A stretch of 64,000 nucleotides of DNA from Ostrea edulis. Lineage: Eukaryota. Position numbers and translations under genes: made by a program. Below the pieces are notes generated by a model. It worked only from the letters and a program-made list of their open reading frames with translations, searched no databases and had not been told where the DNA came from. Where the stretch lies: assembly GCF_947568905.1 (NCBI RefSeq), contig NC_079164.1, positions 18,042,001 through 18,106,000 on the forward strand, read 5' to 3'. Shown here piece by piece: positions 40,314 to 45,430 of the stretch (its first letter is position 1; the number at the start of each line of letters is the position of its first letter).

Positions 40314-41195
40314 TTTTGTTTATAAATAACACTGAATTCCGAACCCGACCCTTTACCAGATTTGCGATCCCGACAGTCAATTAACGGAAAACAGTTTTCA
40401 TAGTCAGGTTTGCATTTATAATATAGGAAACCCCTATGATATAAATGCAGAGGGGTTTCAGGAACCTGACTAAAGTTTTCATTGCTTCGCACGTAAAATC
40501 AGGGTTGGGGGTTGGAGGGGGGGGGGGGGTAGGTACGGTGGGCCCACTTTTTTGACAATGACCATTATTTTTCTGCCCGCCCCCCCCCCCCCCCCCCCCT
40601 CCTCCATTTTATGACAGTAGAAGTTAATGAGATATTCATGAAGTAAGCTACGGAAGCCCATTAGTGCAAACCAAAACTAAATAAAAAACGAAATTATTAT
40701 ATAAAAAACGAAATTATTATATAAAAAACGAAAACTAAATAAAAAACGAAATTATTATATAAAAAACGAAATTATTATATAAAAAACGAAAACACTAAAT
40801 AAAAAACGAAATTATTATATAAAAAACGAAATTATTAAATAAAAAACGAAATTAATAAATAAAAACGAAAATATTAAATAAAAAACGAAATCAAGAACAG
40901 TTTTTGAGAATATAATGTGTGTGTGTCAGTGGAGCTTAACAAGGAAGGAAACATGGCTCCTAATTCTTTGATTTACTGCGATTTCATCATCGCCAATGGA
41001 GTTTTACAGAAATCTAATGACATTACAAATTAGCCAACTTATCCATTCACTACACGTTTATCTACTATGTTCGCTGAAAGGTCCCAAACCTCGTGTATCG
41101 GATTACAGGATTTCTCCAAAATTACTTCAACACTAGCCCCCATAAATCTAAGAATATATATGGCTCCCATCAGCCACATACCTCAACAATCACTT

Positions 41196-41302
41196 GACTC
41201 TACACTAATTAAGTGTTTCGGCGGTGTGAAAATTGAGCAAATTGATTGGATTGATCGATAGATTGAAGTTTAGCTGCATGCAGATCCGCCTCATCAGAAG
41301 TC
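41196..41302 (-). ncRNA. Type I hammerhead ribozyme, sense to the PLE RT and to FBXO21
   Basis: Exact inverted copy of 42757-42863. Confidence 0.85.
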
Positions 41303-41321
41303 TATTTGCACTTCACAATTA

Positions 41322-42416
41322 TCATGCAGGTTGATTATTCTGAAATGAAGGTGTGCGCATATCCCTTAAATTTTTATTGCGTTGGTATGAACCACACTAT
41401 AGGTACAATGTAGAACAGAGAAAACGTCTTTGTCTCTCTGGAGGGTGTGCCATTAATTTAAAAGCTTTTGCTTTTTGGTGGGTTGTATTTGGTGATAAAA
41501 ACAAGGGGTATACCCGGTTTTTTGCTTTTATTTACACCCGATAACAGAGGTGGCTCGATCCTAGTTATTAAGTACCACTTGTACTTTTTTTATTGATTTA
41601 ATTATCACTATAGCCCCTCTTTAGAGGGTTTGTTTTGAAATCTTTAAGAATTTCTTCAATCATTTCAATTAATTTATTCACTCAAATCATTCATACAATG
41701 GTACACGAGGTACATGAATATATAAGTTAGTATTTAAACAACATTGCCACGGGTACAAGTATATAACTAATACATACACATGTATGTGCATTAGCACAAA
41801 ATAAAGGTGGAGGACATAATGCATATAATTTAATATATATACATCTTAGGAAGGACAGCAGACTAACTTATGGATATACATAGTTGCTTTTTTTAAAAAC
41901 TGTTTTAGGTTTCATGTTGTCATTAACTCTCTACATTTCAGTGTATTTGGTAAATGACAATATCTAGGAACCCAAAATTCTTTCCGTAGAGCGGATAGTA
42001 CTTTACATTCTAAGATAAAGTGGTATATTCGTCGGCTAATTTACCAGTAAATATGGCAAATAGTTTCACCTTTTATAAATCTCTTATAAACTGAAGGATA
42101 ATGTGCACTTTTTCGTTCCAGTTTGTAGGTTTGATGTACGTTTTCAAATCTAGAATGCGAGTTGCCTCAAATCACTTTCCTCTATACACCGTACTGCCCA
42201 AGAAATGCATTTTATTTACAGATATTTCACACGTGAATTTAAGCAGTTGATGAGCAGAATTTGCTATAGCGAATAAATCATGGCCGGATTTCTTTTTCTT
42301 CACCATGAACATAATAAAATAAAGCCATCGTCATGATAACGCACTTGGTACGTTATGCGATCCTTGATTATTTGATGTAGTCGGATATCGCATACAGATG
42401 GGGAGCATTTAGACCC
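41322..42416 (-). pseudogene. Decayed Penelope-like reverse transcriptase C-terminal half (palm/thumb)
   Basis: GSKCSPSVCDIRLHQII..RYHDDGF (42416-42321), LKFTCEIS..HFL..KTYIKPT, YKRFIKGETI, KRGYSD, IPLVFITKYNP, YQRNKNLRDM (41387-41358), stop TGA 41324-41322; several frameshifts and stops. Confidence 0.8.
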
Positions 42417-42756
42417 TTATAACACATCCAAATATCTGACCCCAAATTTCCTGAAAATTCCACAAAAATTGCTGAAATATACTCTTATATTAAGTAGTAA
42501 ATGGAGAATTCTGCATACTTTTACTATATTATGAAACTTCCACTATATAGGTCCCCAATAAATAAAATAGCTATTACCCACCAAAAAGCAAAAGCTTTTA
42601 AATTAATGGCACACCCTCCAGAGAGACAAAGACGTTTTCTCTGTTCTACATTGTACCTATAGTGTGGTTCATACCAACGCAATAAAAATTTAAGGGATAT
42701 GCGCACACCTTCATTTCAGAATAATCAACCTGCATGATAATTGTGAAGTGCAAATA

Positions 42757-42863
42757 GACTTCTGATGAGGCGGATCTGCATGCAGCTAAACTTCAATCTA
42801 TCGATCAATCCAATCAATTTGCTCAATTTTCACACCGCCGAAACACTTAATTAGTGTAGAGTC
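42757..42863 (+). ncRNA. Type I hammerhead ribozyme in the inverted arm
   Basis: Stem I GACTT/GAGTC; core CTGATGA (42762-42768); stem II GGCGG/CCGCC with a 61-nt loop; GAAA (42840-42843); stem III CACT-TAATT-AGTG; cleavage triplet GUA, cut after 42858. Confidence 0.85.
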
Positions 42864-44994
42864 AAGTGATTGTTGAGGTATGTGGCTGATGGGAGCCATA
42901 TATATTCTTAGATTTATGGGGGCTAGTGTTGAAGTAATTTTGGAGAAATCCTGTAATCCGATACACGAGGTTTGGGACCTTTCAGCGAACATAGTAGATA
43001 AACGTGTAGTGAATGGATAAGTTGGCTAATTTGTAATGTCATTAGATTTCTGTAAAACTCCATTGGCGATGATGAAATCGCAGTAAATCAAAGAATTAGG
43101 AGCCATGTTTCCTTCCTTGTTAAGCTCCACTGACACACACACATTATATTCTCAAAAACTGTTCTTGATTTCGTTTTTTATTTAATATTTTCGTTTTTAT
43201 TTATTAATTTCGTTTTTTATTTAATAATTTCGTTTTTTATATAATAATTTCGTTTTTTATTTAGTGTTTTCGTTTTTTATATAATAATTTCGTTTTTTAT
43301 TTAGTTTTCGTTTTTTTATATAATAATTTCGTTTTTTATATAATAATTTCGTTTTTTATATAATAATTTCGATTTTTATATAATAATTTCGTTTTTTATA
43401 TAATAATTTCGTATTTTATTTAGTTTTGGTTTGCACTAATGGGCTTCCGTAGTAAGCTTGGAAATAAAGTATGAATAAAAAATAGCTATGTATTTAGCAA
43501 AGTATGAAGATTAATTTTTAAGGTTTGGGGGTAAATTTGATTTTTTGAGTTTTATTTTTCTTCTTTTATCATAATTTTGGTTTTCAAGCGTTTTTGAGAT
43601 GCCATCCACCAACTTTTCTCCCGGCTGCGCCCCCTCCCCCTTGAAATTTGATACTGTAGTATATATATCATCAAAACATGCATCCACAACCACATGAAGT
43701 ACGGACGGTACTATACATATAACAACACCCCTTCCCCATCTGATTTTTTTTTGTGGCGATAATTTCTCCGAAATGTGTGGATTCCCTGTAGATCTATCCC
43801 ATCCCTTCGATTTCATGCTTTTTGTAAGCTTTAAAGATTGGCGTTGTATCGGCGGCGTCCTTCAAGCAAAGGGTTCTCAAGATATTGAGCGGACAATATA
43901 TTCCTATGTCCAGAGTAGATTGACCATTTCATTTTGACCCCTATTGATTTTTAGATCATATGGTCAAAGGTCAATCTACTCTGGACATAGGAATATATTA
44001 TCCCCTAATATCCTAAAGACCCAAATAAAATACCGTATATTTGGTTTCTTGACGGATCACTGGATGTGGTCATCTATTGTGGACACTATTGTTATTTACC
44101 TGGCCAAGAGATCAGGGTGCTGTGCCGCGTACACTTACGCGTGATGTACACAGGAAGGGTCTCAGGGCTGTCCTCAGTGTTTCTGTGGTCATAGTGTTTG
44201 TATAATGGTTGCATCCCTATGACTAGATGACACACAGTCTACCCCCCCCCCCCTCTTTCTCTCTTTTACTCCCAGTCATTGGCTCAATGAATAATTTCTT
44301 TTATAAAAATAGAACTATCATGAATTGATAATATAAATTATTTCAATAAGTTACAAGTTTTAGAAATTAATGGGCAAATTATTGTTTCATTTCTGATTGT
44401 GTCATTTTATAATACATATATATAAAGGGGGGAAATTACAATTATATTAAAATTGCGTTGTTCAGGGGTCTTTTAAAAAACAGTTGAATTACAAGAAAAT
44501 GCAGTTGTGGACAGGTTAATGCTATCAAAACTCTAGTATACAGGGCTTCCTCAAAATCTAAAGAATGCCTGTACAGGTACTGGCTGTTATTGTTATCAAA
44601 ACACCTCTTTGGGGTAGCTCTAGATCACAGTTTCTGCAGATGTCACTCCACCTGAGATCTATTGTTAAATGTTTGATTGACAGACGGCTAACAGTTTGGG
44701 GGTGTTAACTTAAAAGTTGGGTCTTTAAAGGACACATATCATGTTTTCAAAGTATACAGAATTATATGCATTTTGTCTTCCTTATACTTATAGAAATTAA
44801 TTGTAATATATAGTTCGTTCCTAAAGTATTGCGATAATTAGCCACAATACGGACTAAGCCCCGATTTCAAAAAGCCTAGGTACAGTGACGTCATATGCGA
44901 CCTTCCTCGATCAACTTGTTGCAAAAGTAGTGTTAGATATTTTTAAAAACTCGGGTTTCAGGGGCCTAATTTATTTACCATGGATAACATTTTA

Positions 44995-45430
44995 TTTGGA
45001 TGACCCCTATTGATTTTGAGGTCACATGGTCAAAGGTCAAACTGGACATTGGAATATACTGTCCGCTCAATATCTTGAGAACCCTTTGCTTGACAGACAT
45101 CAAACTTGGTACACTGGTACATCTTCAGAAGATGACCCTTATTGATTTTGAGGTCACGTGGTCAAAGGTCAAGGATTAAACTGGACATGGTAATACATGT
45201 ATAGTGTCTCCTACCTTTTAAGAATTATTTGCTTGATTGACACCCAACTTGGTATACTGGTACAGCATAAGGAGTAGATGACCCCTATTGATTTTTAGGT
45301 CACATAGTCAATTCACTCTTGACATAGGAAGTTATTGTCTGCTCAATATTTTGAATTGATGATACTACTATCAATTAAATGATGTGTGTATAACCCTTTT
45401 CAATTTTGCACCATGGGGAGCATGTGTTTT
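44995..45430. mobile_element. HINE/pearl-like interior fragment (related piece at ~43835-44000)
   Basis: Repeated ATGACCCCTATTGATTTTGAGGTCACATGGTCAAAGGTCAA. Confidence 0.55.

What the first reader, a model, noticed from the sequence alone, without database searches (positions are those of the whole stretch)
41322..41520. PLE ORF appears to end after the thumb/NLRD motif with no C-terminal GIY-YIG, yet is followed by a canonical hammerhead
After IPLVFITKYNP and YQRNKNLRDM the frame stops (TGA 41324-41322), and the hammerhead starts about 20 nt later, leaving no room for an endonuclease. Canonical hammerhead-bearing PLEs (Penelope/Poseidon, Neptune) have a C-terminal GIY-YIG. Clades with an N-terminal endonuclease (Naiad, Chlamys) end after the RT and, as I recall, were reported to lack canonical hammerheads. 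This copy may be an N-terminal-EN or EN-less lineage that does carry a hammerhead, which would be an unexpected combination. Clade assignment is inference.
Basis: partly seen in the sequence, partly recalled or inferred. Interest (0 to 1): 0.7.

Follow-up and report, generated by a model that had tools for sequence, protein, structure and literature searches.

The report
Endonuclease-less Penelope fossil with hammerhead
This stretch is the decayed tail of a reverse-transcriptase gene from a Penelope-like jumping-gene lineage that, in oysters, pearl oysters and mussels, ends at this point without any endonuclease and is followed at once by a self-cleaving hammerhead RNA motif; the lineage is real, but this copy is a dead remnant inside a fold-back repeat.

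Summary
On the minus strand, GIPLVFITKYNP and SYQRNKNLRDM are present, TGA lies at 41324-41322, and a type I hammerhead starts 19 nt later (41302-41196). There is no open frame, though. The two motifs sit in different frames with a TAA (41460-41458) between them, and they end a dead, 5'-truncated RT (about 42416-41346).

The missing GIY-YIG is not a private deletion. The closest relatives are about 645-aa proteins from Saccostrea, Pinctada, Mytilus, Argopecten and many unnamed contigs. They start with a conserved MARRFNR and end 5-12 residues after the same N(L/I)xD motif. They carry no GIY-YIG in any frame of the six loci inspected and form one clade (SH-aLRT 99).

In Saccostrea, Pinctada and Mytilus the hammerhead follows the stop codon within 11-45 nt. 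Its core is invariant and all three helices show compensatory changes.

So an endonuclease-less lineage with a hammerhead is supported, and an N-terminal-endonuclease lineage is not. The combination is not unprecedented: Athena, Coprina and sporadic EN-minus families are known.

The window copy sits in a 2803-nt fold-back repeat with about 80 copies, TACGG...CCGTA ends and exact 6-bp target duplications. How that repeat moves is unresolved.

Other first-reader notes cover the fold-back (s1-301757) and the hammerhead (s1-301872) on this window.

The parts
41322..41520 (-). Decayed C-terminal block of the RT protein (GIPLVFITKYNP ... SYQRNKNLRDM). It carries a TAA at 41460-41458, a frameshift, and the terminal TGA at 41324-41322.
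   Evidence: blastx to P0002 aa 506-520 (87% identity) and 553-567 (73%) of a 570-aa protein.
41196..41302 (-). Type I hammerhead. Helix I is GACUU/GAGUC; the core is CUGAUGA; helix II is GGCGG/CCGCC with a 61-nt loop; then GAAA; helix III is ACACU/AGUGU. Cleavage is after GUA at 41201.
   Evidence: The same motif occurs in other species.
41601..42416 (-). Dead RT core from motif B (GSKCSPSVCD) and RYHDDG onward, broken by frameshifts and stops.
   Evidence: Collinear blastx chain to P0002/P0001/P0006, 60-75% identity, E 1e-28 to 1e-33.
40649..41483 (-). Arm A of the fold-back. It holds the end of the RT remnant, the hammerhead, a conserved 3' hairpin region (41229-41161), a tail, the 20-nt arrays and the terminus ...CCGTA (read on the minus strand).
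42576..43451 (+). Arm B, the inverted copy of arm A. The stretch 42576-43303 is 100% identical to 40756-41483. Its hammerhead lies at 42757-42863.
40653..40903 (.). Subterminal array of 20-nt repeats, mirrored at 43148-43445.
40643..40648 (.). 6-bp target-site duplication GTAAGC, repeated at 43452-43457.
   Evidence: An exact 6-bp duplication is found in 12 of 13 complete copies.

Best explanation
Window 41322-41520 is the pseudogenised 3' end of the reverse-transcriptase ORF of a Penelope-like element (PLE) lineage that encodes no endonuclease.

In intact members the roughly 645-aa protein has N-terminal PLE motifs, the RT, an HTH_animal region, and a terminal 'IPLVxTKYNP ... (A/S)YxRxKN(L/I)xD' block. 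It stops 5-12 residues after that block, and a type I hammerhead with a stable helix III and a very large loop II or III lies 11-45 nt downstream. Units are arranged head to tail (periods about 2.6-3.9 kb), one hammerhead per unit.

Inferred, not shown: hammerhead cleavage of multimeric transcripts releases unit-length RNAs that carry the whole ORF. Integration then has to rely on an endonuclease supplied in trans (the genome holds many intact C-terminal-GIY-YIG PLEs) or on pre-existing DNA ends.

The window copy is a dead, 5'-truncated fragment of such an element. It is fixed inside a 2803-nt fold-back non-autonomous repeat that has multiplied as a unit. The coding remnant has no function. 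The two hammerheads, one per strand, have intact cores and could still cleave transcripts that cross them.
For: 1. The remnant is homologous to the endonuclease-less proteins up to 3 residues from their natural end.

2. The best-preserved relatives in the same genome, L059 and L060, end '...SYKRNKNLGDMLTSSIIK*' and are followed by the same hammerhead about 41 nt later. DNA identity to the window is about 70% across the junction and 94% over the hammerhead's 3' half plus the next 45 nt.

3. Of the 120 best database relatives, 115 have no PF01541. The length filter (268-854 aa) would have admitted versions carrying an endonuclease. Median length is 645 aa (IQR 643-647), and N and C termini are conserved.

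4. A six-frame HMM search for the CxxC linker plus GIY-YIG is negative in L059-L064 (this genome, Mytilus edulis, Pinctada imbricata, Saccostrea echinata). Controls score 1e-94 and 2e-63. The Mytilus tandem period is 2566 nt with a 1944-nt ORF, which leaves no room.

5. The 55 endonuclease-less proteins plus L059 form one clade, SH-aLRT 99.

6. The hammerhead core is invariant while pairs covary. Helix II is GGCGG/CCGCC in oysters and Pinctada versus GGUAG/CUACC in Mytilus. Helix I is GACUU/GAGUC versus GGACCC/GGGUCC. Helix III is ACACU(A) versus ACACUCU versus ACACGAA.

7. The MFE fold of the 115-nt RNA gives the three-way junction.
Against: I had no named reference sequences, so the lineage is not placed among Penelope/Poseidon, Neptune, Nematis, Athena or Coprina.

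Only six loci from four species were inspected at DNA level; the rest rests on predicted proteins.

This assembly has no intact copy of the lineage: all five close copies carry a frameshift or stops.

No RNA evidence for expression or self-cleavage was obtained. Rfam does not recognise the motif, and its folding energy is no better than that of shuffles (z 0.54).

The tree was built with the quick search only.
Confidence: 0.85

Rival explanations
1. A canonical PLE with a C-terminal GIY-YIG lost the endonuclease by a deletion private to this copy or this repeat family.
For: Canonical PLEs in the same genome, such as L051, have the same block (RVPLVTTYHP ... SFRRPRNLKDM) directly upstream of the CxxC linker and GIY-YIG. 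A deletion right after it would look like this.
Against: The same ORF end and hammerhead junction is present in a family about 30% diverged in the same genome and in three other bivalve genera. ORFs there are intact and length-conserved.
Confidence: 0.03
2. The lineage has an N-terminal endonuclease (Naiad/Chlamys-like), which the 5'-truncated window copy simply does not show.
For: Naiad and Chlamys ORFs end after the RT (PMC8557442). The window copy lacks its 5' half.
Against: Full-length relatives start at a conserved Met followed by basic residues and the GLKF motif. They have no CxC motif and have DKN/DKS, not DKA. There is no GIY-YIG in any frame up to 2.5 kb upstream. ORF1 of the oyster and Pinctada members has no GIY-YIG match and is predicted all-helical, at low confidence. 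Naiads also lack canonical hammerheads (PMC8557442).
Confidence: 0.02
3. This concerns how this copy multiplied. The PLE fossil is a passenger inside a DNA-transposon-like element with terminal inverted repeats, which is moved by a transposase or integrase.
For: The element has 24-nt perfect inverted ends (154 in the genome), subterminal 20-nt arrays, and an exact 6-bp duplication in 12 of 13 copies. Internally deleted copies of 0.26-2.9 kb keep both ends. The internal junctions are inherited, including those of the rearranged fold-back subfamily. In L059 the true PLE unit ends about 42 nt after the hammerhead cleavage site, so the 510-nt tail, arrays and terminus are foreign to the lineage.
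Against: The 3'-ends-outward geometry is also the PLE norm in this genome.
Confidence: 0.45
4. This concerns how this copy multiplied. The fold-back is a non-autonomous PLE derivative mobilised in trans by a PLE protein that nicks and extends both DNA strands, so both outer ends are 3' ends.
For: GIY-YIG hits lying within 5.1 kb of each other are head to head in 20 cases and tail to tail in 1 (counted by eye). Purified Poseidon protein cleaves and extends both strands and starts reverse transcription at fixed internal sites (PMC11167929). Inverted 5'-truncated copies are a standard PLE structure (PMC8557442). The genome has many intact 787-aa PLE ORFs with a C-terminal endonuclease.
Against: A shared internal junction in many copies and a strict 6-bp duplication are not what independent twin-priming events predict. 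The hammerhead and conserved 3' hairpin lie more than 500 nt from the ends.
Confidence: 0.4

Closest known systems
Athena and Coprina, the endonuclease-deficient PLEs (Gladyshev and Arkhipova 2007; PMC8557442; PMC4209133)
   Same: A PLE-type RT with no endonuclease and a hammerhead near the 3' end. Hammerheads of the endonuclease-deficient fungal and protist PLEs also have a large helix III.
   Different: Those elements sit at or near telomeres and carry short reverse-complement telomeric repeats next to the hammerhead. The loci here are interstitial and have no (TTAGGG)n or (CCCTAA)n. Relatedness of the RTs was not tested.
EN-minus families that arise inside EN-plus clades, such as the Neptune-like MjPLE01 of kuruma shrimp and the Chlamys PLE-X families (PMC8557442)
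   Same: Apparent absence of the GIY-YIG within an otherwise canonical-looking PLE, with the hammerhead retained.
   Different: Those are described as occasional single families. Here the tree holds at least 55 diverged proteins of conserved length from several bivalve genera and unnamed contigs. Whether this is loss or the ancestral state is open.
Canonical C-terminal-endonuclease PLEs (Penelope/Poseidon, Neptune, Nematis)
   Same: N-terminal GLKF and DKx motifs, RT, the same IPLVxTYxP...NLxD block, pseudo-LTRs, and tandem or inverted copies.
   Different: No CxxC linker and no GIY-YIG. In this genome the endonuclease-bearing families carry the minimal hammerhead (6-bp helix II with a bulge, almost no helix III). 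The endonuclease-less lineage has a 5-7-bp helix III.
Naiad/Chlamys, the N-terminal-endonuclease PLEs (PMC8557442)
   Same: The ORF ends after the RT region.
   Different: No N-terminal GIY-YIG, no CxC, no DKA, and a hammerhead is present.
Metazoan non-LTR retrozymes (PMC7229834; bioRxiv 10.64898/2026.07.22.740005)
   Same: Head-to-tail repeats with one type I hammerhead per unit. Invertebrate retrozyme hammerheads also have a workable helix III.
   Different: Retrozymes are 170-400 nt and non-coding. These units are 2.6-3.9 kb and encode an RT.

Membership tests
Penelope-like elements (general) | PLE-type RT with N-terminal GxKF/Y and DKG-like motifs | tested here: met
   Relatives have RGLKFVP and KKADK(N/S). 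Their RT is 35% identical to the GIY-YIG-bearing PLE L051, and RVT_1 plus DUF8422 plus HTH_animal are on record.
Penelope-like elements (general) | Hammerhead motif in the repeated 3'/5' region, with tandem or inverted copies | tested here: met
Canonical EN-plus PLEs (Penelope/Poseidon, Neptune, Nematis) | C-terminal GIY-YIG endonuclease in the RT ORF | tested here: not met
   Pfam and the local HMM are negative in the proteins and in all six frames of the loci.
Naiad/Chlamys | N-terminal GIY-YIG linked to the RT by a CxC domain | tested here: not met
   Conserved N-terminus MARRFNR... without Cys motifs; no GIY-YIG upstream.
Naiad/Chlamys | Insertion-in-fingers domain in the RT | not tested
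   No reference alignment was available.
Athena/Coprina (EN-minus) | No endonuclease | tested here: met
Athena/Coprina (EN-minus) | Telomeric location and reverse-complement telomeric repeats beside the hammerhead | tested here: not met
   The loci lie 3-64 Mb inside chromosome-scale contigs, and there are no telomeric repeat runs.
Athena/Coprina (EN-minus) | RT groups with Athena or Coprina in a phylogeny | not testable with these tools
   No named reference sequences could be obtained.
Hydra clade | C-terminal endonuclease without CCHH, DKT and RWK motifs, GxKF not conserved | tested here: not met
   No endonuclease; GLKF is conserved; the motif is DKN/DKS.
Hammerhead ribozyme, type I | Core CUGAUGA...GAAA...UH with helices I, II and III, helix I open | tested here: met
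   Covariation across species is shown. Rfam's models do not reach threshold.
Hammerhead ribozyme, type I | Self-cleavage at the predicted site | not testable with these tools
   Only contig-level runs were available, with no read ends.

The most novel reading that the evidence does not exclude
The endonuclease-less units of about 2.6-3.9 kb, with one hammerhead each, may be RT-encoding counterparts of retrozymes. Tandem transcripts would be cut by the monomer-competent hammerhead into unit-length, possibly circularised, RNAs. These would both encode the RT and serve as its rolling-circle template, so the lineage would spread as tandem arrays without any endonuclease of its own. It would also be the long-sought autonomous source of invertebrate retrozymes. 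A related open reading concerns the GIY-YIG position. It lies before the terminal block in one sister clade and after it in canonical PLEs, which may reflect independent gains on an endonuclease-less ancestor.
Probability: 0.15. Interest if true: 0.8.

Novelty: new member of a known kind. Interest (0 to 1): 0.45.

Why it matters
PLEs are the least understood class of retrotransposons. How an element spreads inside chromosomes without an endonuclease, and what its hammerhead is for, are both open questions.

A large, length-conserved, endonuclease-less clade in interstitial tandem arrays offers natural material for both questions. So does its hammerhead, which looks able to act as a monomer, whereas endonuclease-bearing PLEs of the same genome carry minimal hammerheads. 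The same material bears on the proposed link between PLEs and retrozymes.

For annotation, the practical point is that the roughly 645-aa 'DUF8422 / RVT_1 / HTH_animal' proteins of bivalves are complete PLE ORFs, not truncated models.

Tried and rejected
Rfam. I scanned the window at gathering score and at E<=10, 20 endonuclease-bearing loci, and 5 endonuclease-less loci. No hammerhead was called, so I wrote my own descriptor and checked it against simulated sequence.

RNA evidence. No run on record as RNA holds the stretch. Contig-level laying showed neither starts nor ends.

ORF1 of the oyster and Pinctada members. It has no Pfam family and one database homologue. The Atlas hits were uninformative, and the AlphaFold model had pLDDT 45 and was all-helical, so no fold search was run.

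Genome fetches. I therefore could not read a Naiad locus, a 787-aa PLE locus, the intermediate RT hits (C3:38.6 Mb, C9:69.8 Mb), or the 17-kb pair of termini at C2:662398-679643 that might be an autonomous carrier.

Telomeric repeats. None were found.

An 8-bp target duplication, as in the other first-reader note. Only 6 bp are duplicated in 12 of 13 copies; the extra bases in the window belong to the TA of the termini.

Consensus. I did not build a family consensus or a repaired frame. I searched the broken RT piece by piece and used natural intact relatives instead.

Full report
WHAT IS IN THE WINDOW

On the minus strand the sequence reads K-P-G-I-P-L-V-F-I-T-K-Y-N-P from 41520. It then hits an in-frame TAA at 41460-41458. 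In another frame it reads S-Y-Q-R-N-K-N-L-R-D-M from 41390 and ends at TGA 41324-41322.

Nineteen nucleotides later a hammerhead begins.
- Helix I is GACUU (41302-41298).
- The core CUGAUGA follows.
- Helix II is GGCGG/CCGCC and closes a 61-nt loop.
- Then come GAAA and helix III, ACACU/AGUGU.
- Cleavage is after GUA at 41201, and GAGUC closes helix I.

The minimum-energy fold of the 115-nt RNA is this three-way junction, although its energy is no better than that of shuffles. A descriptor asking for at least 5 bp in each helix is expected 0.005 times per window and is seen twice. Rfam never calls the motif.

There is no ORF here. Upstream, to about 42416, lies a collinear but broken RT: motif B GSKCSPSVCD, then RYHDDG, and so on.

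THE SETTING

The region belongs to a 2803-nt fold-back element at 40649-43451.
- Its arms, 40756-41483 and 42576-43303, are 100% identical in inverted orientation, so the hammerhead occurs once on each strand.
- The outer ends carry 20-nt arrays and the termini TACGGAAGCCC...GGGCTTCCGTA.
- The genome holds 154 such termini, roughly 80 elements.
- Complete copies have an exact 6-bp target duplication in 12 of 13 cases; here it is GTAAGC.
- Arm-to-arm identity falls with copy age (99.3%, 96.2%), so the composite is inherited rather than homogenised.
- There are two subfamilies. The older one has, in place of the inner part of arm B, a direct pseudo-LTR fragment followed by more of the RT, from just after motif A.

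IS THE MISSING ENDONUCLEASE PRIVATE TO THIS COPY? NO.

A protein search of the genome with a 51-aa stop-free piece of the dead RT found better-preserved relatives.
- L059 and L060 have RT frames of 488 and 448 aa. After one frameshift comes a 154-aa frame ending '...KKQGIPLVFVTKYNP ... SYKRNKNLGDMLTSSIIK*'.
- The same hammerhead follows about 41 nt later.
- The unit, about 3.2 kb, is ORF1 (about 250 aa), the RT ORF, the hammerhead, and about 42 nt, repeated in tandem.
- DNA identity to the window is about 70% across the ORF-end/hammerhead junction. It is 94% over the hammerhead's 3' half and the next 45 nt, which include a GUGGCU...AGCCA hairpin.

Searching the protein collection with the L059 RT gave 1299 hits.
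- Of the best 120, only five carry PF01541, although the length filter (268-854 aa) would have let endonuclease-bearing versions through.
- Named sources are Saccostrea echinata and S. cucullata (86% identity), Pinctada imbricata, three Mytilus species and Argopecten irradians.
- The proteins begin MARRFNR... and end 5-12 residues after the N(L/I)xD motif. Median length is 645 aa, IQR 643-647.
- The window remnant aligns to P0002 up to residue 567 of 570.
- In a maximum-likelihood tree, 55 such proteins plus L059 form one clade (SH-aLRT 99). The next clade out ends in '...VRAKL'. It is followed by a clade whose GIY-YIG sits upstream of the terminal block, with the canonical L051 as outgroup.

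COULD THE ENDONUCLEASE BE HIDDEN IN ANOTHER FRAME, EXON OR ORF?

I built an HMM of the CxxC linker plus GIY-YIG from 23 natural sequences and ran it on all six frames of L059-L064, each with 2.5-kb flanks.
- Nothing scored better than E 0.5, while controls scored 1e-94 and 2e-63.
- One locus of the '...VRAKL' sister clade (L065) and one deep member (L068) were also negative.
- In Mytilus edulis the units repeat every 2566 nt with a 1944-nt ORF.
- ORF1 is conserved between oysters and Pinctada (E 1e-99 and 2e-10) and absent in Mytilus. It has no family and is predicted all-helical at low confidence.

THE HAMMERHEAD IS A LINEAGE FEATURE

It follows the stop codon after 43 nt in S. echinata, 16 nt in Pinctada and 11 nt in Mytilus, counted to the start of helix I. 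It recurs upstream of each unit. The core is invariant while the helices covary.

| Helix | Oysters | Pinctada | Mytilus |
|---|---|---|---|
| I | GACUU/GAGUC (window), GACUC/GAGUC (S. echinata) | GGACCC/GGGUCC | GGACCC/GGGUCC |
| II | GGCGG/CCGCC | GGCGG/CCGCC | GGUAG/CUACC with a bulged U |
| III | ACACU(A) | ACACUCU | ACACGAA |

The big insertion sits in loop II (40-126 nt) or loop III (58 nt in Pinctada). One family copy has GGUGG/CCACC, but both changes are CpG transitions.

The genome has 42 exact core-plus-helix-II copies. All belong to these families, and there are no short-period arrays.

By contrast, 17 of 30 endonuclease-bearing PLE loci of the same genome carry the minimal hammerhead described for PLEs: a 6-bp helix II with a bulge and almost no helix III (PMC4209133).

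COMPARISON WITH WHAT IS KNOWN

But endonuclease-less PLEs with hammerheads are established (Athena, Coprina). The same paper notes that EN-minus families occasionally emerge inside EN-plus clades, for example the Neptune-like MjPLE01. Fungal and protist endonuclease-deficient PLEs have hammerheads with a large helix III (PMC4209133), as here.

Unlike Athena and Coprina, these loci are interstitial and lack telomeric repeats.

I could not place the clade among the named PLE clades. I found no paper in the held library that describes it, and that absence is weak evidence.

HOW THIS COPY MULTIPLIED IS OPEN

A carrier like a DNA transposon with terminal inverted repeats is suggested by several points:
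- strict 6-bp duplications and perfect inverted ends;
- subterminal arrays;
- internally deleted copies that keep both ends;
- the fact that the true PLE unit ends about 42 nt after the hammerhead cleavage site.

PLE twin priming in trans is suggested by other points:
- a head-to-head bias of GIY-YIG hits, 20 to 1;
- the finding that a purified PLE protein nicks and extends both strands (PMC11167929);
- many intact 787-aa PLE ORFs with a C-terminal endonuclease in this genome.

No intact endonuclease-less RT exists in this assembly.

LIMITS

- There is no expression or cleavage evidence.
- The tree used the quick search only.
- Genome fetching ended.

Noticed in passing
window 40649-43451: The whole fold-back has perfect inverted ends (TACGGAAGCCCATTAGTGCAAACC) and an exact 6-bp target duplication. 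About 80 copies range from 0.26 to 6.8 kb, and all keep both ends. This behaviour fits a DNA transposon as well as a retroelement.
   Followed up: partly
L025-L054 (endonuclease-bearing PLE loci) versus L059-L064: In one genome, PLEs with a C-terminal GIY-YIG carry the minimal hammerhead (CUGA(A/C)GA, a bulged A, a 6-bp helix II, almost no helix III). The endonuclease-less lineage carries a hammerhead with a 5-7-bp helix III and giant loops.
   Followed up: partly
P0108, P0111, P0113, P0117, P0118 versus L051:1-1806: The GIY-YIG domain sits upstream of the terminal IPxVxTY...NLxD block in one clade and downstream of it in canonical PLEs of this genome. The endonuclease therefore occupies two different positions relative to the same block.
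   Followed up: partly
genome-wide GIY-YIG hits: GIY-YIG hits lying within 5.1 kb of each other are head to head, with 3' ends outward, in 20 cases and tail to tail in 1.
   Followed up: partly
L064:1586-2227, L059:470-1228, L063:1018-1752: A conserved ORF1 of about 210-250 aa precedes the RT ORF in oysters and Pinctada but is absent from the Mytilus units. It has no known family.
   Followed up: partly
L021:2341-6419: One family copy carries a roughly 4-kb insertion that is itself a fold-back (arms 2341-3931 and 4827-6419, 95% identity) with no ORF of 100 aa.
   Followed up: no
window 40497-40632: A G-run/C-run palindrome lies just left of the element. It gives many sub-threshold microRNA-precursor matches, which are probably spurious.
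   Followed up: no
window 43857-44027 and 44999-45318: Hairpin-forming short repeats (GATGACCCCTATTGATTTT...) look like MITE copies. They also give sub-threshold plant microRNA matches.
   Followed up: no
L062:5067-6944: The third unit of the Mytilus tandem array is annotated with a 789-aa product instead of 647 aa. No GIY-YIG is on record for it.
   Followed up: no
window 318-389 (minus strand): A tRNA gene (Rfam, 62 bits).
   Followed up: no
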